Positions 24,030-37,600 of a stretch of 64,000 nt of DNA are shown here, one piece after another. Where the stretch lies: NCBI GenBank assembly GCA_000708835.1, contig DF236996.1:154397-218396 (forward strand). Direction: 5' to 3'. This DNA comes from Klebsormidium nitens (lineage: Eukaryota; Plantae; Klebsormidiophyceae). Numbering within the stretch: the stretch's first letter is position 1; every line of letters begins with the position of its first letter. The position numbers were made by a program, and so were the translations under genes. The notes under the pieces are model-generated. The model was not told the DNA's origin and made no database searches. It worked only from the letters and a program-made list of their open reading frames with translations.

Positions 24030-27000
24030 CTAAGTAGCGGCTCGATAGTGATCAAAACTGATCGCTTGGGGGAGCGCGTTCCTTAAGGTAATGCTTTCAT
24101 TACTTTCAGAAGGCTCTTGCGGAGAGACGACTCTCTCAATAGCGACGAATCCGCTCCAGATCCCATTCTCCCCTTCCAACCGGGTGAGATAATGACCGGA
24201 CCACTCTTTTCGAGTCCTCTCCAGATACGGTTCCAAACCCACGTCTTCCTTTCCGTCACCTGTACCCACATCCCCACTCTCGTTTTGGGCTTCGCAGCTT
24301 GACCCTCTCGGGGTATTCCGCTGACCCAAACTCCGGCGGTCGAAACGGAACGCCGCGGGCGGCCAGTCGTGCAGCCAGTCTTCCTCGCCGGCGGGCGCGC
24401 CCAGCGCGGCGGCCGGCAGCCGCGGCCGCGGCCGCCACTCCGCCAAACCCCTTAAACCTTTCCTGCGCCTGGCGATCCTGAAGATGAGCGCGCAGAGGAC
24501 AAGCGCCAAGACGCCCGAGAGAACTAGGACGGGGACGAGATATCCGGCCTTGGATTTGGGCGATGTAGCTGGGGTGGGACCGCTGGGAAACGCACCCGGG
24601 GGATGCAAACCGGAGATCGGAAAGGTGGTGGGCCGGGGAGAATTCCAGGGTGCCGAAAGCTTAACGGCGGAGACGTTGGACACGTGGAACACGAAGGGCG
24701 CGTCCACGTAGCTATTTGCGGTGCCTGCGATGGGCCAAGTTGGACGCTCAGCTTCCTTTCTTGTATTTCAGTTAGGCAAGTCAGATGTGTATCCATCAAA
24801 GTTTCAACTTCATTTCCTGTTGGGTGTTGTAAAGCGCCTTCAAGAATTCGAAAGAAGATACCTGCAACTGCCAAGCCTCTGTTTCTCCAAGTTTGCCAAG
24901 TTTTAATGATGTTGAAGAACAAAGAAACATCGCTGACATTTTCCATACGTTGGACAGTGGAAGCCAGAGGTGCACCGGCCAAAAGCTGCAGGTCAGAACA
25001 CTGATTCAGGAGAAAGTTTAGGATCAGTTCATTACCGTAAGGAACTTGTGAGTTGGTAATCTGAAGCGTCAAGAAAGTGTTCAAGTTCCGTTGGAGTTTG
25101 ATCGGAACTTATCCGTCCGGGTTCCGCCGGAAGCCTCACCTGACCAGCTGCCGTTATTCACGTCTGAAGCGTCCCAAATGGAAGTATACCTGCAAGGAAA
25201 GTTTTGCATATTTCTTCCTGAAGATGAGAGTCCGTCCCGATAATTTCATTTCTCCTGAAGTCTGAAGCCCTCATTATAAAAATCCACTACCTTCAAGCCT
25301 AAAGGCACTTTTGCAGGTCTTTACGAGCTCAGGTGTGAACCTACTCAACGGATCGAGCTAGCTTTTGGTAAGGTAAATTCTGATGAGCTCCCAAATGATC
25401 ATGTTTTGATTCGAAGTCCATACGACAGGGAAACTTCGAAACGGAAGGCAGACTTTTCCCCCTGCTTTGTCTTCGCCTTTCCTTTTTTGATAGTTGTGCA
25501 GTGATAGGCGTCACTTACAAAAAGCCTGGCAGAGTGGGGTATGGTAGCCCCGTCTTGTTGTACACGGTCCGCACCTCTAAGCCGTCGATAAACCACCTAA
25601 ATTTTGAATCCAAAGGCTGCCGTGAGACACACCGGCACACTCGAAATTGGGCCGGTAACAACGAATTATGGTTCAAAAGGCCTTTTGAAACTAGCCAAAT
25701 CTACATCGATAGCCTATGTTTGTTCTGTGCTTTTCCAAAATGAGGACAAAAGATTCTTCTCATCTTGCAAGCACTGCAAACAATCCTGATTGATTGGGTC
25801 TGATTTCACAAGAGTATCTAGACCGGTAACTGGAAAGCCGATGCGATTAAGAACTCACTCATCAGGCCGGGACGGATGACGATAAGACTTCAGGTATTAC
25901 GGTGGTTCTGACTTTCAGGGCAACCAAATCGCGTAGCTCTCCGTTTGATTTTGAAGTCGACCTTATGTATCCTTTTTAGACCATTCGACTAGAAGTTTCC
26001 GACATACTCGTCATCGGCCGCTCACTTGATTCGCAGAGGTGTCCAGTCGATTTGGTACTCGTGAAAATCTTTCGAACAATCAAAACCCAGCTCGATGATT
26101 TTCTCGTTCCCCACACCGAGTGTCGTGGCGCTTCCGTTCACATAGTAGTTCACCTGCAGACCAAACCCAATGTTTCAGAGTCGCAGCCTTATCCCGAGGA
26201 ATGGACCCATCCACTCTGGACTCATTCCAGAGGGTCAGCGTTTATGCCGCCACAAGAATGTTACTTTGAAAGAATTAAGATTCCGCCGTGACCGTCTTCC
26301 TACCATGTGCGGTATTGTGGCAGGATCTTTCACGTGCATGGCATCAGAGGCAGAAAGAATGCAAGCGTAACGGCTGATGTGATTGAAAAGAACAGTAGCT
26401 GTCCCTCATACAGATCTGCGGTTCCTGACCAATCCACTTCAAGCCCTAACCAGCCCACCAGAGGACTATCAAAAAACCTGTGTTTCGAGATGCGCATCCA
26501 ATCCATCCAATGAGTATGCTAGTGTGCGTTCTCCCGCCCTCAGGTGACACGAAGCACGAACATCTACCTGAACGATCGACTTATTTCTGCCCAGCCACTC
26601 GAAATCGATCTCGTCTTGCGCCGGTTTTATCCCCGCGGTTTCTCGGCTGCAGAGGTTTGGAAAGAATCGTTCAGGCAGAGCTTTGAGAATCCGAACCTGA
26701 AGGTTGGAGGGCTCTACAATAAGCAAGAATGAGCGCAGCTCGATTAAAAGTCAGCAGAACGGATTCAACTATTTGGATAATGGTCAGAAATGTTTTGCGG
26801 GTACCCGGCTGCCATTCTCCCTGGTGCTCGCGGACTTACCTGGACGTGTAGAAATTCGGTAAAAGCCCAGTAGTGTTGCCTGCACACAAACTAGCGTTCT
26901 AAATGAAAACGACAATGCACTAGCTTCACAGATTCTGTGCTTTTGCATTGATGCTTGGTGTCTTCAACTTTTTGGTGTTTCGCCCATACTGATGCGGGTG

Positions 27001-28216
27001 GAACATCAGCATGGATGTTCCGTCGTGCTTCGAGACCAACTTAGAGCGAAGCAGAAGCTCAAACGTCAGCCGGTCACTCAAAAGTTTTCAAGGCAAGATT
27101 TGGAGGCGTCGGAAAACGGGAACTTCGTCCACCGTATCTCAGCTTCCGCGTTCTGTTTGAAGAGGAAGCAAGCTCACCTGCGGGACACTTGATCATAGCT
27201 GAAAAGATGCTGTACACGTAGCGCTGAGCGGTGTGAATGCGCGCTCCCGCCGCGGAGCCGCTCTTGGCGGAGATGCTACAAACGCATGCGATGAGCGCGC
27301 TTGCTAATAGAAAGATTCCATTCTCTTAAAATAAACCTCACTGCCTTTGAACCCGCTATATTGGGCTTGATTTGAGACTCTCTCCTTTGATCCATTGAAG
27401 TGCAGAATAATCCAATTTCAAGGAGCGCAAGTGGAATGATTGTTTGCAGCACGTGCCTATTGCTGGCAGTGGCCATGGCTGTTTTTTTTGGAAAAGCAAG
27501 AGCTGCTGTGAGTGCGAGCTTGAAAAAAATAGATCCTACCGAAACGCATCGGTAAGGTGAATAGTACTCACGTGAGACTTAAAGAAGCTCCTGAGTCAGC
27601 CACATTCTGAAGGTCTGCAAAAATGAGGTTTGAGATAAGAGATAGCTTTCTCATTCACGCCTGATGCACAAATCATGACGCTATGAGCCCTACTTGTATC
27701 TCCTCTCCATGAACGCGCAAATCTCAAGCGCTTTGCCCTGTATTACTTGTTTCAATCAAAAGGTATGGATTTCCGGATACTCACATAAAGCTTGACAAGT
27801 ATCTTAGAACTTTCAAGCAGATGGGCGGTTTTCAAAAGCAACCCTCATGATCGAAGCAAGCCAGATGCTACGAAATTTTGTCTTGCTTGCATGCATGGTC
27901 AGATTCGTAGGCAATCAAGCGAAACAAGCAGCTTCAGCATCTCGACTAAATTGATGTTCGTGACACAATTGATCTAGGAGAGATCTCGGCCAGGAATTTT
28001 TGAAGAGCACTTACTGTAGTCACACCAGGCAAACGGGGTTTCCGCCGTCATGTTTGCGGGCAGCAGCGTTCCGTTGTTCAGATCAGGATCGGAAGGCAGT
28101 CCCTCAGGGTCCCCTGTTGCGTTCCGTTCGACCAGAAGAGCCCTGTGAGCGGAATCTCGATCGACCAGCTGAGCCTCAGCGGACTCCAGAAGAAACAGCA
28201 AAGCAAAAGAAACCAT
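24030..28216 (-). CDS. GH16 endoglucanase of EG16/XTH-related type with signal peptide, Pro/Ser/Thr linker, transmembrane helix and cytoplasmic tail; 9 exons, about 470 aa
   Basis: Exons 28216-28015, 27614-27572, 27275-27178, 26879-26840, 26646-26568, 26153-26026, 25596-25519, 25189-25140, 24724-24030; all phases match. The catalytic ExDxE motif is intact: QDEIDFEWLGRNKSIVQVNYY. EG16-like motifs: GARIHTAQRYVYSIFSAMIKCPAGNTTGL, LGFDCSKDFHEY, WFIDG, LYTSIWDAS, DAPFV. The TM segment YLVPVLVLSGVLALVLCALIF is followed by RIARRRK. An upstream in-frame ATG at 28291 is an alternative start. Confidence 0.92.
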
Positions 28217-29281
28217 GGGACTAGAAAACAACGAACGTGCGCGGAAAATTTTCCCTCCGTGCCGCAAAATTACTGCCCAGAACTGCATCATCGCTAGAAT
28301 GCCTTCGCCCCCTTATCAGGCTTTGTTGTTTTCTTTTGACATTCAAAACCTGTGTCACGCAGTCAACGGCCAGTTTTCTTTACATCAGCAACAGCGCCTC
28401 CTTTCAACAACCCCTACAAGATCTTTGTGAATCTTTCTTTCCTATACTTGGAGATCAAATCCTCAAGTATCAAGGGCCCAAGACCTAAGTCGCCCCTCTT
28501 GAGTTCTGTTAAAATTGGCGGCCGAAAGCAGGTCTTCCTTTCTATGCAGCTTCACGGCACAGTCGATTTGAACTCGCACTCTAAATCTCGAGGACTCGTA
28601 GTAGGAGGTAATCTACCTTGATACTTTTCTACTTTGAGAATGAAAGGGGCGACTCAATCCTGGTAACTTGCGTGATCAGTTATCTTGGAATCGTCTGGCG
28701 GATTGATCGAAGAGATACTGGATAACGGATATCAACCGTTATGAGAAGTCCACCAGCTGAAACCAGTAGGATCACCAAAGTTTAGGTCCGGTCTGTCTGG
28801 CTTCCCTTGCCTTCCGACCGGGCCGGACGTTCTGATTGTCTTGACGACGTCAGATGGGAATCTACTGTCAGATTCCAGGTCCACTATTCCCTGGCGGTTG
28901 GTTCCACTGTCGGTTGCAGACACTTCCAAGACTTAAGCACCGGAGCGACTGATATACACTCGACGCGCCATATTCAAAATTCTGACCCGGAATTCTTGGT
29001 TGAGTCGTTTTCTTGCTCTCCAAACTGGTCCGTTGGGCTTCAGATTCCGTCAGCTCCTACCCAAGACTTGGTGCGCAGCGCGCGCCGAGTTCAACTCGTT
29101 GGAAGTTCCAAGGTGCGGGAACTATGCACCCTGCCTAAGAGCGAGCCTTGTACTGGCTCGCAGGACCCCCTGGCCAGCGCCGAATCTTGATACTACTCAA
29201 GATGTGCTTGCATATATATCGCCAAACCGCATCATGGATCAACACGGCGCGGACTCGTGAGGATAATACAGAACAACACTG

Positions 29282-29863: not shown

Positions 29864-31251
29864 TCAGGGTTCATCCAGATATTGCTGCAAAGACTTGTCG
29901 ATATGTCCGAATGGGTTCCTAAAGGTGCGATAAAACAAGCCCGATTCCAGCGTTACCTGCCTGACAATATTCTTCAGCTTTCTGTTCCCCTCAATCAAAG
30001 TTCTTTGCTTCGCAGCGAGCCGCTCCACCATGAACGTTAAACGGTCCACAGGCGAGACTGACGTCACCGGGCTATCACGCAGAGTCCTGCTGACGCACCG
30101 CAAGCAGCCGACATCTGACGTTGCCAGACCACCTCGCTGTCGCAGTACAAGGATGACGTCGAGCATCTTCTCAAGCGTCTCTCGCCCCATCCAACTGACT
30201 GGGGCCGCCTCTTCAACTTCAGAGACGTTGATTTCCGGTCCGTGAAGGGGTTCTATAATCAAGGAATCCCTTAGTTCGCTGTGAGCGGGAACGTCCGTGC
30301 TTTGGACTTCCGCTACATTGGCATCTGTCAATGAGCTCCGGCCGGCGACAACGGCCGCCAGTGACCGAGTTCGCTGATCAGATGGAGCATTTGCGTCCGG
30401 GAGAGGATCTGCAAGACATACATATGCTGAAATCTCTCATTTGCCCGGATCAGGATCCGCAGTATGTCCTACGCCTTGACCTCAACAGCAGAAGGAGTTC
30501 TGTTTCAAGAAATGAAAGTACGAAATTGAAGAGATACAGTCGCTGATAAGATTTACCGATAGAGAAAAGCGTTTGAGTGAAGCTCGGAGACCGCTCAGAT
30601 GGGGGGCTCACGATACAACATCGCAGCTCAGAAGGATATTTCAGCCATTTACCGGTAGCTTCAAATTGAGGATCAGTACGATAATCAGTACTGGACAGGA
30701 ACCCTTGAGAAATGCACAAGCAAGGCGATATATATTAATTGCCTGTGAGTTGATCCGTCGAAATGACTGGCGAAGACGACCTCAGTCTATCCAACAGGAA
30801 CGTCATGAGTCTGGTTCCAAGGTCATCTTTGCCTAATCTGAGTATTGTCAGTTTAAAGAAGTACTCTGACGGATGTCAGTTGGAATGAAGCCTGTTTTTT
30901 CCTAAAGGATGATATCAACGGAGGCAGTTTGTAGAACAAAGATTCAATCTTTCAGGACGGACTCCTCCTTCACCATCATTGCGGTGTGCTAAGCATTAAT
31001 GACAAAGTAGATCAAGCAGAAGGGGAGTTGAAACGATGAGATCACGGACTGACCTATCCTTGATCACTTTGAACAAAAGCTGCTTCTACAGTACTTATTG
31101 CAGTAGACAAGTTTGCATGCAGCGGCATCAACTCACCTGAATTCAGCACATGAGGCGGCCGAGGCGCAGCGTCCGAGTTGTTCTCACCAAGTCCCGACTC
31201 CCTGCCAATCTGATGCGGCCGGAAGCAGCTGAAGAAGCTCTGGAGAGGCAT
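29864..31251 (-). CDS. Two-exon hypothetical protein, about 191 aa, with a weak F-box-like segment
   Basis: Exon 1 31251-31137 (ATG CCT CTC CAG...TCA G|GTGAG, phase 1) joins exon 2 30324-29864 (gacag|AT GCC, phase 1) in frame. The segment LEKMLDVILVL...TSDVGCLRCVSRTLRD loosely resembles an F-box. It is head-to-head with the TBC gene. Confidence 0.6.
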
Positions 31252-31694: not shown

Positions 31695-34600
31695 ATGTCC
31701 AGCACAAGCACCGGTCATTGGGCGTTTGACTCCTGGAAGATGACGCAGCAGGTTCTAGACTCGTATGGTTTCTCTCATGCCCTGACTGGTGAGGAAGCCG
31801 TTCAGCGGCAGATGTGCGAAACGAGGGCGAGGGAGCAGCAGAAGGTAGGGCAGCTCAGTCTTCTTTTCCTCTTTCAGATCGATGGCTTGCAGTTTCAGAA
31901 TTAGTTGTCGGCAGATTGTTGTTGTTGATCAGGGTGTCATGAGTCCATCTGCACGACGAGCACAGTGGATTTGAGATCAAGTAAGGTGTCATGCCTCATG
32001 TTGAGCAACTTTGTATCCTCATCTGCCCCAGTTGAATTAGGGTTTGAGAAGCCCGTCGACATGGGGTGCAGCTTCAATACTTCTCTTTGTTTGGAGTTTA
32101 GCTGTTCCTCTTAATGTGGCCGCAGCTATCTCGCGTGGCCGTCACAATGAGCTTCTAGCCTGTGCAAGAGAGCCTGTGCTCCCCTTTGTGGCAATTGAGT
32201 CACGGCCTTTGCAATTCTCTACAAAGGGTTTGCAACCTATTTCAGCGCACCCACCTTTCGTGCCTAGTTGCATGCTCCTGGCAGAATCTAACATGGTAGA
32301 TGGGCCGCAGAGCTCAAGCTTCGGATCTTGATATCTTTTGACTTAGTGGCACTGCTTGGTCTGATTGCATTGCAACGTAGATCAACCGGCCTATCTGCCA
32401 AGGGAACGACACACACTGTCATGTCAGCAGACTGAGAGTATCGGGTGTCATCATGATACAGCGGGCAGAAATATCCAACAAAGTGGGGGTCTTCTTACCT
32501 AAACCATGGGGAGCAACAGGCTTACAATTGTGGCTTTTTTTTTTCACGCATGGGGCCTCCACTTCTGCCTTAAATTGACATCCTTCGGCTTTGCCAGTCA
32601 AACAAAACCGGCGCGCAACCAGAAAATAATGTTTTTTTGACCCAATACGTGCTGCAGATGTGGTGGGAGAAGGAGCGGACGCTAGGCCCGGGGTGGTATG
32701 AAGACGAGCTTGAGGCGGGCCAGAATGGCTTTGCTGGGGGGTTCTCAATGGCTGCCGTCACAGCAGTGGCAAACGGTTCTTCCCTGAAGAAGCTGATACG
32801 CAAGGGCATCCCGGCGCAGTCTAGAGCAAAGGTAATTGCGTTCGGACCTGAAGTTTAGAGATAAGTGGGTGTTTGGAGCAGATGCAGTAGCACGTTATAT
32901 GTCCTGGGGCCCAAAGTCTTGCAGAGTTCGCTGTCCGGCTGCTGTCCCGCTTTCCGGATGGAATTTGTGGCCCCATTTCTTATGACTTTCAGAAAAATGT
33001 GTGCAAAGCTGGCCCGTGCGCTGCTTCCAACTCCGGGACTCAAAACGGCCAGAAGAAAATGAAAGGAAGCCAAGATCGAGGGGGACAAGGGGGAAGGATA
33101 TGAAAGTACCAGTACGATGCGAAAGCAGCAATATGTAAGCACGACGTGATGATGCATCTTCGGTCTCACAGGTGTGGTGGAGTTGTTCGGGAGCTGGCAA
33201 GAAGGAGCGGGAAGCTGGGGAGGGGTACTATGCGAACCTGCTGAAATTGGTGGAGGGGAAGGAGACGGTGCACACACGGCAGATTGACAACGTGAGTGCT
33301 CTGTGTTTCAAGTAGCAAACACCTTTTGCTTTGCTTGTGATGGACCCCAGGCGTCTTAAGGGTTTTGACCTGTCTAAAATAGGTTGGCTCTTTCCTCAAA
33401 TCGATCCTGAGGCGTCCGAGAAGTTTTTTGGATTCATGCAAGGCTGCCAGTATGGCGAGTCCGCCCTGTTGCGAGTTGGCGCTCAGCGGTCTCTCAGACT
33501 CTCTGGAAACCTCTGTGCTCTTTCCTGCAGTCAAAATTCTGGTTCGCTTCAGGCATGTTGAAGGAACAACGATGCTCGTCAGGCCTGTTGAACAGAATCG
33601 AAGTCAGGGAACAATCACAAACATCTTCTAGGGTCAGGGTGTATGAGAGCCGACAGTCTTTTCTGATTGATGTGTCAGAGTAGATCTCTAATCACAACTG
33701 CTTCTCGTTCACACCAGCTTGAAATTGTCTGTGTATATTCTCTGTCCTTCTCGGGGATTAACGTCACCCTTTCTCCCAACAGGATGTACATAGAACGTTT
33801 CCCGGGCACCCCTGGCTGGACTCCGAAGAGGGGAAAACGCTGTTGCGACGGGTGCTCGTTGCATACTCCTGGCGCAACCCCGGCGTCGGTTACTGCCAGG
33901 TCAGTGGCACGTGCCTTTCTGCCTGCCTGGCCTGACACAAGTCCTGGATTTGACGTGCTGCCTGGAGCTTCCGCGGTTTTATTCGGAACTCAAGCCGTTT
34001 GGATAGAACGGGCTTGTAGTCGTCGCTACAAGTGGAATGTACGAGGACCTGAATAGGGAAAGGAACCGAATGTGAACGATCGGAGAAGTCTCCGGGCTTT
34101 TCCGACCAGCTCATACGAGCAGCTGTGACGATAGCGGCGACTTCTCCTTACTGGCCTCCTCTGCTGTCGCTTATTGTGAGCGGCCGAGGGGTTTCGGGAG
34201 GAGCCGAGTGCCTTGTCACCAGAAGTCTTTACAATTGCAACTTCTTCTTGCTTCTCTCTTCTATTGACTAATACTGACAGTCTGTCCCCTTGTCTACACT
34301 CTCTCGGTCTCTCATCTACCCAGTATTAGAATTAGTCTACGGATCTCTTGCTCTTACTCACGGTTTGACCCTCAATTTTGGTTGTGTCCTTCCCCCAGCT
34401 TTTGCCCTTCCCTATCTCGCAGTTGGCCTCATCACTCTCCGTTCCATCCTGCAGCGTCCGTACTATCAGCAAGTCACAATGACTCTGTTCCTGCCCGTGT
34501 ATCTGTTTATCTCGTTTCCCTTGACCCAGCGCTTAACACCCTTTGGTTGCAGTTCATGAACTATGATACGGCTTTCCTGCTTCTGGCCATGTACTTTCTC

Positions 34601-37600
34601 ATCTCGTTTCCCTGAACCCAGCGCTTGTTTCCTTAACCTGCAGTCCATGAACTACGTAACGGCTTTCCTGCTCCTGGTCATGCGGTCCGAGGAGCACGCC
34701 TTCTGGATGCTCGCTACCCTGCTGGAGGATATTCTGTACGAAGACTCGTACTCGGGGGTGAGAATAGGCAGTGAAGTCGCCCCTCTGATAGAAAACTTTC
34801 ATGATCAAAAGTGGTATCACCCGTCCAGTACAGGGATTGCTTGTTACTTCTGCGGAGGGTCTACTGTAACTTGCAAGACCTTGCTACGCCATTCCGACGG
34901 GGAGTGATTGATTTGGAGAATTTCATCACGACCGATAAATAGTGAAAAAGCGTAGCTTGGGGCTGTCGGCAGGTCCTAATCAGACCCAACATATTCTGGC
35001 TGTGTTATGATACGGGCTTAGTTTTCGGTTCATCTCCAGAACTTGAAGTATCCCGCCTTCGGAACAAAAAGCTGGATCAAGCACTGTGCGCACTTGCAAG
35101 ATTTGGATAGGGTATGGGTTTCGAGTCCGGTTCGCGTTTCCCTCTATTCCGCTCGGTCATGATGGAAAGGCATGACCCGTGTGCAGCCGGCTCAGCTGCT
35201 TTTCGTCGTCCCGCAGGACCTCTCAGGATGCCACGTGGAAACTCGGGTACTAGGGGAACTACTAGAAAAGAAACTGCCTAGGTGAGCAATTGTCATCACT
35301 TGGACTGTGACCCGTCACTCGTAGCCTCAAAAAGTCGGCTTGTCTGGAGCCGTTCACAGCGATCCACCTTTAATCCGCACATGTCTCCGCCACATTGGTT
35401 GAATTCCTAGGTCGGCCATGCAAGTTGATGGCAAGAAGGCGATGAAACAGTGCGCACGATATGTGCTAGGGAAGTAGTCCTTTTGCGTTCCGACTTCGTC
35501 GTCACTGTGAAGGCTCTTTCTGCATTTCAAATTGTTTCACTGCACCGTTTGAAGACAAGTGGTCCACAAGCGTCATTCGCTGTCATAGGATACAGTACTA
35601 TATACTTCTTCTTGCGGTCGATCTGGAGTTGTTGATTACAACTCTCCTACCCGAAATACAAAATATCTTGCGTCAAAAGTCACACCCTGCCGTCGCGTGT
35701 CGATTAGACCCGTTCAATTACGACTCCCTGAATTCATACCAACCGAATCATCCATATTTTGCGTGTGCCACAAAGGGTTACAGACTTCCACCGGAGTGGC
35801 TCAATATTTCAGCAGAGCTTCCCCCAGAAACTTGGCAGTCCGCTTGCGGAAGAAGTTAGCCTACCAGCATTTCGCTCGGGTCCGTAAGAAGCCCATTGCT
35901 TAGTCAGAAAGTTGCCGATAGTGTCCGCCGAACTGTTGAACAAAAAGTCTCGGCAGACCCAGTTTCCGCCATAAAGTGCCGTTTTTCCGATTCGTTGCGT
36001 TCTTCGATGCAACCACACTCATTTGAGAGCCCAGATGCAACTTCGATTATTACGTACTGAATCGGTTGAAATCTCGATGCTGCATCAAACCGAGCCCTAG
36101 CCCAAAAGTCAGATAACTTTCTGTTCCCCGCAGGTTGGCGGTGCTGCTAGAGAAACTAGGGTGCGAGCTGGCGCTCCTGTGTACAGAATGGTTCCTCTGC
36201 CTCTTCGTCAAAAGCCTGCCGCCAGAGGTGCGTGAGCGACGCCGGCCCACTTCAGATTGCTCTTGCTGACTACGGAATAAAGTTTGGCTTCTTCTGATGT
36301 TGGTTCTTGCGCCGGCAGCCTGTGTCGGAATTCGAAGGACCGGCCGTAACGCGTTCTTCGATTCATTTGGTACAATGATTCTAGAGTTTATGCGAAGGGG
36401 GTCAAAGGACAGGTTCTAGAAAAGACCACGAGATGAACTTGGTGCGAAATACCTTGCCTTCGGCTGGTTTGCACTCTCTGGGGCACTGCAAGCAAGGGAT
36501 TGGCTGGCCGAAACTGTGCTTTGGAACATGCGTGTACTTTCCTGATACCCAACTCTTCCGAACGGTCAGAAGTGATTACGCTTCCGGAAGCGCTTCACAA
36601 AAAGGTTTGTTAGTTTGAGCATAGACTCGTCACTGTCGATCGATAGTTTCGCTTCCCATCTTTTAGAGCACACGCGACCCTCTTAAGCTTGAGACGGGAC
36701 CAGTGAACAGTCCCGAGATAGATCGGGCGGTCCGTATGGTCGGGCAGTCCAGGTTTAGTTGGACTTTTTGATTTTTATGAGACGGTTTCAGCACAGATTG
36801 GCGGTTTCAGGTCTGAGCATGAGAAGATGAGCGATGTCCACAAAAGACTGATGGGCCCATTCTTACCGTCTCTCTTTCGACTGTAAAACCGTTTGGGCCA
36901 GCTTTGGAGCTCCTCTTCAACTCCACTCGTCAAGAATGTGGGTCTTCTCCTTCTTGTGTTGCAGCTGCCGTTATGTTTTACTCAATGCATACTTGTCCGT
37001 TTGCAGACAACGATGCGGATCTGGGACGTTCTCTTCAACGAGGGAGCGAAGGTCATCTTCCGAGTAGCGCTCGCTTTGTTGAAGGTATGCACGGGATACC
37101 TTGGATACCTCACAGGTTTGCGGATCAAACATCTGACTGTGTCGCTTTGCCGTGTGCCCGAAGGTATACATGCGCAATTTCTATGTCGGAGTTCAAACGT
37201 CAGATCACGGCGCATACAAGAGACTGAGCGACGCCGTGATTTTAGATCAATCTGGAAGGATAAAGTGCTGGACAGTGTGCCGTGTGAAGGGCTGGTTTAA
37301 GGGAGCGGCTGATTTTTATTACGTCAGCATCGGTAACAATGCTGGGGCATAGACTTTGATTCAAAAGATTGATAGCTAGCTGTGCTTGTGCCAAACACCT
37401 ACATTGTTTTATCCTACTTTTTGCCTGGGGTACTTACATTTGGATCAAATCAGGGGCTTTCGAAAGATAGAAAGCTGCACGGGGCAGCTTTGACACAAAA
37501 ATCTCTGTTTCCTAGAAGGCGGCCGTGGTTCACCAGCAGGACGAGCATTTTTTTTGTATTTAGAAAAGTCCGCCTCTCAGTGAACACTTTGCGACGACTA

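What the first reader, a model, noticed from the sequence alone, without database searches (positions are those of the whole stretch)
24030..28216. Receptor-like, membrane-anchored EG16-type GH16 with a cytoplasmic tail of about 150 aa
Seen: signal-like MVSFALLFLLESAEA, several N-x-S/T sequons, a complete GH16 domain with intact DEIDFE, a Pro/Ser/Thr stalk, one TM helix, a basic stop-transfer RIARRRK and a long low-complexity tail. Established: the motifs match the EG16 clade (QDEIDFExLGxxKxIVQxNYY, LGFDCS, WDAS) more than classical XTH, and the XTH C-terminal extension is absent. Land-plant EG16s are, as I recall, small soluble enzymes without a signal peptide. Inference: a plasma-membrane- or Golgi-tethered glucanase/transglucanase, or a wall-glycan sensor, possibly relevant to the origin of XTHs. 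Topologically it parallels the anchored fungal Crh GH16s.
Basis: partly seen in the sequence, partly recalled or inferred. Interest (0 to 1): 0.75.

Follow-up and report, generated by a model that had tools for sequence, protein, structure and literature searches.

The report
Membrane-anchored algal EG16-2-type GH16 glucanase
A green alga (probably Klebsormidium) has an intact nine-exon gene for a wall-glucan-cutting GH16 enzyme fixed to a membrane by one helix and a conserved 149-residue inner tail, an arrangement I did not find described for this plant-lineage enzyme group.

Summary
Window 28216-24030 (minus strand) gives a clean nine-exon, 470-codon reading frame with GT..AG at all eight introns. 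It encodes a signal-like N-terminus, a complete GH16 domain with an intact DEIDFE motif, a 40-residue stalk that is 50% Pro/Ser/Thr, one strong transmembrane helix followed by RIARRRK, and a 149-residue tail.

The last GH16 beta-strand, the stalk, the helix and the tail all lie in one uninterrupted final exon. Simple alternative splicing therefore cannot make a complete soluble enzyme.

A related alga's genomic contig (L001) keeps exons 5-9 with the same lengths and splice sites. dN/dS is 0.12 for the enzyme part, 0.27 for the helix, 0.60 for the tail and about 0.9 for the stalk. All 5 ectodomain N-glycosylation sequons in the covered region are conserved; neither of the 2 tail sequons is. The tail has no detectable relatives beyond two close taxa, is predicted disordered, and carries two strongly conserved motifs.

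By published criteria the best class is EG16-2 (signal-peptide-bearing charophyte GH16), not EG16 proper. "Receptor-like" has no support.

No transcript evidence could be obtained, and no tree with named EG16-2, EG16 or XTH sequences could be built. I rate it a new variant of a known kind, of moderate interest.

The parts
24030..28216 (-). Whole coding region: nine exons, 470 codons plus stop
   Evidence: Splice model built from window coordinates. All introns are GT..AG, the phases agree, and the only stop is terminal.
28015..28216 (-). Exon 1: start codon, signal-like segment (aa 1-15, 28216-28172), and an N-terminal region with three sequons up to Trp64
   Evidence: Read directly. Donor is ACA|GTAAGT. 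The exon is not covered by any orthologous contig, so it rests on splice sites, phase, and Trp64 lying 13 residues before the first conserved strand; bacterial L003 has 11 there.
27572..27614 (-). Exon 2 (43 nt): first conserved GH16 strand
   Evidence: Canonical sites. Aligns with the L-x-L-T-L-S strand of bacterial GH16.
27178..27275 (-). Exon 3 (98 nt): GH16 strands ending in M-I-K-C-P-A-G
   Evidence: tblastn with bacterial homologues hits 27277-27176 in this frame. Canonical splice sites.
26840..26879 (-). Exon 4 (40 nt): strand G-L-L-P-N-F-Y-T-S
   Evidence: Canonical sites and phase. Aligns with the G-L-N-T-A-F-F-T-Y strand of L003. Not covered by L001.
26568..26646 (-). Exon 5 (79 nt): catalytic exon; DEIDFE at 26615-26598 (Glu140, Asp142, Glu144)
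   Evidence: Pfam GH16. Matches only EG16 entries in the PDB. Same length and splice sites in L001.
26026..26153 (-). Exon 6 (128 nt): N-Y-Y-V-N-G to W-T-P core strands
   Evidence: Pfam GH16 at E = 2.5e-8. PDB lichenases 5e-8, EG16 4e-6. NCBIfam BglS 1.5e-10. Conserved in L001.
25519..25596 (-). Exon 7 (78 nt): W-F-I-D-G strand
   Evidence: tblastn with bacterial GH16. Conserved in L001 with the same length.
25140..25189 (-). Exon 8 (50 nt): S-I-W-D-A-S strand
   Evidence: 88% nucleotide identity to L001, with the same length and splice sites.
24663..24724 (-). Start of exon 9: last GH16 beta-strand (aa 240-260, Y-V-D-A-P-F-V-F-H-V)
   Evidence: 19 of 20 residues are identical in the window, L001 and L002, with dN/dS of 0-0.13. 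Aligns with the terminal strand of bacterial GH16.
24543..24662 (-). Stalk, aa 261-300: 10 Pro, 6 Ser, 4 Thr out of 40
   Evidence: Read directly. dN/dS is about 0.8-1.1, and indels are in multiples of three.
24480..24542 (-). Transmembrane helix, aa 301-321
   Evidence: Hydropathy 2.92. AlphaFold2 helix at residues 62-87 of the exon-9 model, block-mean pLDDT up to 86. dN/dS 0.2-0.4.
24033..24479 (-). Tail, aa 322-470: starts with RIARRRK; conserved motifs at aa 345-368 (24410-24339) and aa 401-416 (24242-24195)
   Evidence: Three-way alignment and dN/dS of 0.34-0.61. Predicted disordered except for a short helix in the second motif. No family, structure or atlas match.

Best explanation
This is one functional gene for a type I single-pass membrane glycoprotein. 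A cleavable signal sequence takes the N-terminus into the ER. An N-glycosylated, catalytically competent GH16 endo-beta-glucanase/transglycosylase domain of the charophyte EG16-2 type then faces the lumen or the cell wall. It sits on a roughly 40-residue Pro/Ser/Thr-rich, probably O-glycosylated stalk. One helix spans the membrane, and a 149-residue disordered tail stays in the cytosol. Shown here: the exon structure, the intact catalytic motif, the continuity of the last GH16 strand with helix and tail in one exon, purifying selection on enzyme, helix and tail, and topology-consistent conservation of sequons. Inferred: the enzyme works while tethered, cutting or re-joining beta-glucans (mixed-linkage, xyloglucan-like or cellulose-like chains) right at the membrane-wall interface or in Golgi/TGN lumen. 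Also inferred: the two conserved acidic/aromatic tail motifs act as short linear motifs for sorting, endocytic cycling or docking to a partner, much as in the membrane-bound glucanase KORRIGAN or the fungal Kre6/Ghs2 GH16 proteins.
For: The gene model has canonical sites and one open frame. GH16 is detected exon by exon and across the whole domain in a scripted alignment. Exon 9 alone carries the last strand, stalk, helix and tail. L001, from another species, has exons 5-9 with identical lengths (79/128/78/50 nt), AG..GT everywhere and an open frame to the stop. The enzyme part is 87% identical with dN/dS 0.12, the helix 0.27, the tail 0.60, and tail motif aa 346-368 is 96% identical. L002 gives the same picture for exon 9. 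Nucleotide similarity between the window and L001 is confined mainly to exons. All 5 ectodomain sequons are conserved and neither of the 2 tail sequons is. Six Arg/Lys lie in the 15 residues after the helix against 2 before it. AlphaFold2 sees a confident helix only at the membrane segment. Literature: charophyte EG16-2s carry signal peptides (PMC8711696); membrane-held relatives exist in the wider family (AtXTH33, PMC8453972; Ghs2 with Bgs3, PMC13612389).
Against: No cDNA or transcript evidence was obtainable. No full-length or spliced product is in the protein collections. Exons 1-4 are not covered by any orthologue, so the N-terminus and the signal peptide rest on sequence rules only, and an upstream in-frame ATG exists. 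No predictor (SignalP, TMHMM) and no fold of the joined protein could be run. Substrate, location (plasma membrane versus Golgi) and tail function are inference. Overall tail dN/dS of 0.6 is only moderate constraint.
Confidence: 0.7

Rival explanations
1. Membrane-bound precursor that is shed. The helix and tail serve only for transport, and a protease cuts the stalk to release a soluble wall enzyme like other EG16-2s.
For: The stalk evolves almost neutrally (dN/dS about 0.9) and is extended and exposed. Other EG16-2s are described only as signal-peptide proteins (PMC8711696).
Against: The helix and two tail motifs are under clear purifying selection, more than a disposable anchor needs. No conserved cleavage motif is visible in the stalk.
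Confidence: 0.15
2. Wall-glycan sensor or receptor. The GH16 domain binds wall glucan and the tail signals to the cytosol.
For: The single-pass type I layout with a conserved cytosolic tail is the layout of many receptors.
Against: The catalytic Glu-Asp-Glu is intact and the enzyme part is under strong constraint. The tail has no kinase or other signalling domain and is predicted disordered. No relatives of the tail exist outside two close taxa.
Confidence: 0.08
3. Annotation artefact. The GH16 exons and the helix/tail exon belong to different transcripts, or the tail is untranslated or decaying sequence.
For: No transcript evidence was found. The tail is lineage-restricted and low in complexity in places.
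Against: The final GH16 strand is in the same exon and frame as helix and tail, and without it the jelly roll is incomplete. The frame stays open over 230 codons in three taxa, with indels only in multiples of three. GC3 in the tail equals that of the enzyme part. The same exon order is found in L001.
Confidence: 0.05

Closest known systems
Charophyte EG16-2 group of GH16 (Behar et al. 2018, not held; Shinohara and Nishitani 2021, PMC8711696; six genes in Klebsormidium nitens, twelve in Penium, bioRxiv 10.1101/835561)
   Same: A streptophyte-alga GH16 with a signal-like N-terminus, an EG16-like catalytic motif, lichenase/ExoK-like core strands and no XTH C-terminal extension. An alphaproteobacterial ExoK-like gene is the nearest prokaryotic locus found.
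   Different: The papers held describe these as signal-peptide proteins and never mention a transmembrane helix or a cytosolic tail. Here a stalk, a helix and a 149-aa tail follow the last strand. Placement in a tree with named members was not tested.
Land-plant EG16 (VvEG16 / PtEG16; PDB 5dze, 5dzf, 5dzg, 5sv8)
   Same: Q-D-E-I-D-F-E-x-L-G-x-x-K-x-I-V-Q around the catalytic residues. No XTH extension.
   Different: EG16s are about 200-aa proteins without a signal peptide (PMC8711696). This protein has a signal-like start, N-glycosylation sites and a membrane anchor.
Bacterial beta-1,3-1,4-glucanases BglS / ExoK (GH16_21)
   Same: 34% identity over 231 aligned positions to an alphaproteobacterial ExoK-like protein (L003). 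Same catalytic motif and strand order.
   Different: This gene is eukaryotic and has introns. The G-W-S-N-G loop motif before the conserved Trp is not recognisable. The bacterial enzymes are soluble and secreted.
Arabidopsis XTH33
   Same: A member of the same GH16 super-clade, reported to have a transmembrane domain and to reach the plasma membrane by conventional secretion (PMC8453972).
   Different: XTH33 is a true XTH with the C-terminal extension. From memory, its membrane segment lies near the N-terminus and it has no long conserved C-terminal cytosolic tail.
Fungal Kre6 / Skn1 / Ghs2 membrane GH16 proteins
   Same: A GH16 domain held at the membrane with a cytosolic tail. Ghs2 works beside a glucan synthase (PMC13612389; Kre6 is type II, PMC2120205).
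   Different: Opposite topology (type II, with an N-terminal tail), a distant GH16 subfamily, and no sequence relation of the tails.
Fungal Crh transglycosylases
   Same: Anchored GH16 enzymes related to the lichenase/XTH branch.
   Different: Crh proteins are GPI-anchored (my own knowledge). Here 149 residues follow the hydrophobic segment, which is incompatible with a GPI signal.
KORRIGAN (GH9 membrane endoglucanase of plants; my own knowledge)
   Same: A wall glucanase that works while membrane-tethered and whose cytosolic tail carries sorting motifs. This is a functional analogy only.
   Different: A different fold and family (GH9), and type II topology.

Membership tests
GH16 (Pfam PF00722) | Catalytic E-x-D-x-x-E motif on one strand | tested here: met
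   D-E-I-D-F-E at aa 139-144. Pfam and PDB matches cover it.
GH16 (Pfam PF00722) | Complete beta-jelly-roll domain of about 200 aa | tested here: met
   The joined model aligns from Trp64 to the last strand with bacterial GH16. tblastn recovers exons 3, 5, 6 and 7 in order. The fold itself was not modelled, because the joined sequence has no reference.
EG16-2 (charophyte GH16) | Signal peptide for secretion | tested here: met
   Hydrophobic core F-A-L-L-F-L-L plus A-E-A before Gln16. All 5 testable ectodomain sequons are conserved. This is rule-based only; no predictor was run, and there is an alternative upstream ATG.
EG16-2 (charophyte GH16) | No XTH-type C-terminal extension | tested here: met
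   No XET_C hit on exon 9 at E up to 1. The stalk starts directly after the last strand.
EG16-2 (charophyte GH16) | Loss of the lichenase/ExoK N-terminal loop | tested here: inconclusive
   The G-W-S-N-G...C motif is absent in frame, but about 48 unrelated residues precede Trp64 and the alignment there is unreliable.
EG16-2 (charophyte GH16) | Groups with named EG16-2 sequences in a tree, apart from EG16, XTH and GH16_21 | not tested
   No plant EG16, EG16-2 or XTH sequence could be retrieved by reference. The word searches returned only bacterial proteins or the L001 exon.
EG16 sensu stricto | Small soluble protein without a signal peptide | tested here: not met
   Signal-like N-terminus, 470 aa, and a transmembrane helix.
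XTH (GH16_20) | C-terminal extension (XET_C) | tested here: not met
   No XET_C match.
Fungal Crh-type anchored GH16 | GPI anchor signal at the extreme C-terminus | tested here: not met
   The hydrophobic segment is followed by 149 residues.
Kre6/Skn1/Ghs2-type membrane GH16 | Type II topology with an N-terminal cytosolic tail | tested here: not met
   The anchor is C-terminal to the catalytic domain and positive charges lie after the helix.
Receptor-like protein | Recognisable cytosolic signalling domain | tested here: not met
   No Pfam, NCBIfam, PDB, atlas or sequence relatives for the tail. The tail is predicted disordered.

The most novel reading that the evidence does not exclude
The tethered EG16-2 is a dedicated partner of a membrane glucan synthase (callose, cellulose or mixed-linkage). 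It would be held at the extrusion site through its helix and conserved tail motifs, remodelling nascent chains as S. pombe Ghs2 does with Bgs3. Acting at the membrane would then be an early, perhaps ancestral, mode of action in the lineage that later gave soluble EG16 and XTH enzymes.
Probability: 0.1. Interest if true: 0.8.

Novelty: new variant of a known kind. Interest (0 to 1): 0.5.

Why it matters
EG16-2 enzymes are proposed to be the intermediates between bacterial ExoK glucanases and the XTH family that shapes all land-plant walls, and none has been characterised biochemically (PMC8711696). A member that is obligately membrane-tethered and has a selectively maintained cytosolic tail would show that early streptophyte GH16 enzymes were not all free wall proteins. 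It would offer a concrete candidate for glucan remodelling at the membrane-wall interface in an alga that lacks XTHs. It would also give testable motifs for sorting or partner binding. The case is limited, because the tail is seen only in three closely related taxa and expression is unproven.

Tried and rejected
- Transcript or full-length protein evidence: none found. The word search with exon 9 gave only two exon-level homologues. phmmer against 1.84 billion representatives gave the same cluster plus one low-complexity hit. An exact look-up of the 225-aa ORF found nothing on record.
- Reference sequences for a tree: not obtained. A profile made of a bacterial scaffold plus exons 5 and 6 returned only bacterial ExoK-like proteins. 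The exon-6 profile returned only L001's own exon. Both metagenome scans found nothing.
- MAFFT of all short exons against a bacterial scaffold misplaced the fragments, so that alignment was discarded.
- Short exons alone are uninformative against the PDB.
- ESM Atlas, PDB and NCBIfam gave nothing for the tail.
- Alternative reading for exon 4: an in-frame acceptor at 26682-26681 would replace exon 4 by L-P-E-R-F-F-P-N-L-C-S. I rejected it. The stretch is the pyrimidine tract and branch-site region, and the L001 counterpart is hydrophilic with a 2-nt indel just upstream.
- F-W-S-N-G in the +1 frame of exon 1 (28137-28123) looks like the lichenase loop motif. tblastn with six bacterial homologues gives no hit there and no GT donor could link the frames, so I treat it as chance.
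- GPI anchoring is rejected because of the 149-aa tail.
- Joined model: the 470-aa model was not given to any search, family, fold or look-up tool, because it has no reference. It was built and analysed only inside scripts from window coordinates.
Full report
**Gene structure**

The region is a eukaryotic, intron-containing gene on the minus strand. Six-frame reading and the DNA itself give nine exons:
- Exon 1: 28216-28015
- Exon 2: 27614-27572
- Exon 3: 27275-27178
- Exon 4: 26879-26840
- Exon 5: 26646-26568
- Exon 6: 26153-26026
- Exon 7: 25596-25519
- Exon 8: 25189-25140
- Exon 9: 24724-24030

All eight introns (193-429 nt) start with GT and end with AG. The phases agree, and the joined frame is 470 codons with a single terminal stop. 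Exons are 57% GC against 46% for introns. GC3 is 65% overall and 64% in the tail.

The joined model has no reference, so I did not hand it to any search, family, fold or look-up tool. It was built and analysed only in scripts from window coordinates. Everything sent to tools went exon by exon.

**What the protein contains**

- Residues 1-15 have a hydrophobic core and A-E-A before Gln16.
- Residues 16-63 are an Asp/Pro/Leu/Asn-rich stretch with three sequons.
- Trp64 to Val260 is a GH16 domain.
  - Pfam GH16 hits exons 5, 6 and 7 separately; only exon 6 (34 bits) passes the 22-bit cut-off, exon 5 (17 bits, E 0.004) and exon 7 (10.9 bits, E 0.31) are weak.
  - The catalytic D-E-I-D-F-E is intact at aa 139-144.
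  - tblastn with bacterial homologues recovers exons 3, 5, 6 and 7 in order.
  - In a scripted alignment the model covers the whole domain of an alphaproteobacterial ExoK-like protein, at 34% identity over 231 positions.
- After the last strand comes a 40-residue stalk that is 50% Pro/Ser/Thr.
- Residues 301-321 form a helix with Kyte-Doolittle mean 2.92. It is the only confident element in an AlphaFold2 model of exon 9.
- The basic stretch RIARRRK follows, then the tail to residue 470.
- Six Arg/Lys lie in the 15 residues after the helix against two before it. With an N-terminal signal this predicts a type I topology with a cytosolic tail.

**Are the enzyme and the anchor one protein?**

The strongest argument is internal. 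Exon 9 begins with the last GH16 strand (aa 240-260) and runs on, with no intron and no stop, through stalk, helix and tail. A complete jelly roll therefore cannot be made without also translating the anchor. Intron 8 holds no alternative exon for that strand.

The second argument is comparative. The word search with exon 9 found two homologues. Their contigs are L002, from a JGI metagenome, at 76% identity, and L001, a 5.9-kb genomic Logan contig, at 59%.

L001 carries exons 5 to 9 in the same order. The lengths are identical (79, 128, 78, 50 nt), every boundary is AG..GT, and the frame is open to the stop. Nucleotide similarity between L001 and the window is confined to these exons, with three exceptions: the 3' end of intron 4, one 54-nt intronic patch and a 3'UTR patch.

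**Selection**

| Region | aa identity to L001 | dN/dS |
|---|---|---|
| Enzyme part (aa 129-260) | 87% | 0.12 |
| Stalk | 45% | about 0.9 |
| Helix | 81% | 0.27 |
| Tail | 59% | 0.60 |

Across the three sequences the tail dN/dS ranges from 0.34 to 0.61, and indels occur only in multiples of three.

Two tail blocks stand out. Residues 345-368 are an acidic/aromatic motif around E-E-D-W-L-H-D-W. Residues 401-416 centre on L-E-P-Y-L-E-R-T-R. The second block shows many synonymous changes, as expected for protein-level constraint. The first shows almost none, which I cannot explain.

The sequons give topology evidence. All five in the part of the ectodomain that L001 covers are conserved (aa 149, 160/162, 210, 235, 256). 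Neither of the two in the tail is. This is what is expected if the N-terminal part is glycosylated in the lumen and the tail is cytosolic.

**What the tail is**

- Pfam, NCBIfam, PDB and the ESM Atlas give nothing.
- phmmer against 1.84 billion representatives finds only the P0001 cluster and one low-complexity hit.
- AlphaFold2 predicts disorder, with a short helix in the second motif.

It is therefore a lineage-restricted, disordered tail with conserved short motifs. That is the usual form of sorting or docking signals, not of a signalling domain. "Receptor-like" has no support.

**Which GH16 group**

- The catalytic exon matches only the plant EG16 structures in the PDB.
- The next exon matches Bacillus lichenases best, at 5e-8; EG16 follows at 4e-6 and XTHs are weaker.
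- NCBIfam gives BglS and ExoK.
- A scan of one genome per prokaryotic species gave as nearest loci a Rickettsiales-MAG ExoK-like gene and a Photobacterium gene.
- No XET_C extension is present.

Earlier notes of this scan name the genome Klebsormidium nitens. I did not verify that. Shinohara and Nishitani (PMC8711696) report that K. nitens has six EG16-2 genes and no EG16 or XTH. They also report that five of the six have signal peptides and that EG16-2s nest among alphaproteobacterial ExoKs.

All of this fits EG16-2 rather than EG16 proper, so the signal peptide is expected. That paper mentions "transmembrane" only in its reference list. The Penium genome preprint says nothing about anchors in its EG16 passages, and Behar et al. 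2018 is not held. I could not build a tree, because no plant reference sequences could be retrieved by reference. Group membership therefore remains a well-founded inference.

**Mechanism**

The most likely reading is a tethered endo-glucanase/transglycosylase that acts at the membrane-wall interface or in the Golgi lumen, with the tail motifs governing traffic or partner binding.

Precedents for membrane-held relatives exist:
- Arabidopsis XTH33 has a transmembrane domain and reaches the plasma membrane (PMC8453972).
- Yeast Kre6 is a type II membrane GH16 protein (PMC2120205).
- S. pombe Ghs2 works next to the glucan synthase Bgs3 (PMC13612389).

None of them has this type I layout or this tail. 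The rival readings are shedding of a soluble ectodomain, a sensor role and a mis-joined model. They are ranked in the report sections above.

**Limits**

- There is no transcript evidence.
- Exons 1-4 have no orthologous support.
- An in-frame ATG at 28291 could add 25 residues.
- No signal-peptide or topology predictor and no fold of the whole protein were available.
- The tail is known from only three close taxa.

**Verdict**

I rate it a new architectural variant of a known enzyme group, of moderate interest.

Noticed in passing
window 24410-24339 (aa 345-368 of the model): The most conserved tail motif is also conserved at synonymous sites. dS is 0.065 against L001, compared with 0.5-0.65 elsewhere in the gene. 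In the aa 341-360 bin, 15 of 17 invariant residues use the same codon in all three taxa. This could reflect codon bias in a GC-rich stretch or a constraint at the RNA/DNA level.
   Followed up: partly
window 26462-26410 (intron 5): A 54-nt patch inside intron 5 is 83% identical to L001 335-387, while the rest of the intron does not align. Rfam finds nothing in the window.
   Followed up: no
window 26743-26647 (3' end of intron 4): About 100 nt upstream of exon 5 are 70-80% identical to L001, including a branch-site-like CTGAAC. An AG at 26682-26681 would give an in-frame alternative that skips exon 4. I judged it non-coding.
   Followed up: partly
window 28137-28123: The +1 frame of exon 1 reads F-W-S-N-G, which resembles the G-W-S-N-G loop motif of lichenases/ExoK that is missing from the coding frame. 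There is no tblastn support and no splice route, so it is probably chance.
   Followed up: partly
window 28291-28217: An in-frame ATG-ATG lies 75 nt upstream of the proposed start, and a good acceptor-like site (TTTTCTAG) sits 5 nt before the ATG at 28216. The true 5' end and start codon are therefore open.
   Followed up: no
window 34563-37300 (+): Exons of a RabGAP-TBC domain gene (Pfam PF00566 on two ORFs). It is unrelated to the GH16 gene.
   Followed up: partly
window 29864-30331 (-): A 155-aa open frame upstream on the same strand has no Pfam match. It is probably the last exon of the neighbouring gene, which leaves about 1.5 kb of intergenic/promoter DNA.
   Followed up: no
window 23827-23712: A stretch about 200-320 nt downstream of the stop codon is still 68% identical to L001 and lies within the 80% match to L002. 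It is probably a conserved 3'UTR element.
   Followed up: no
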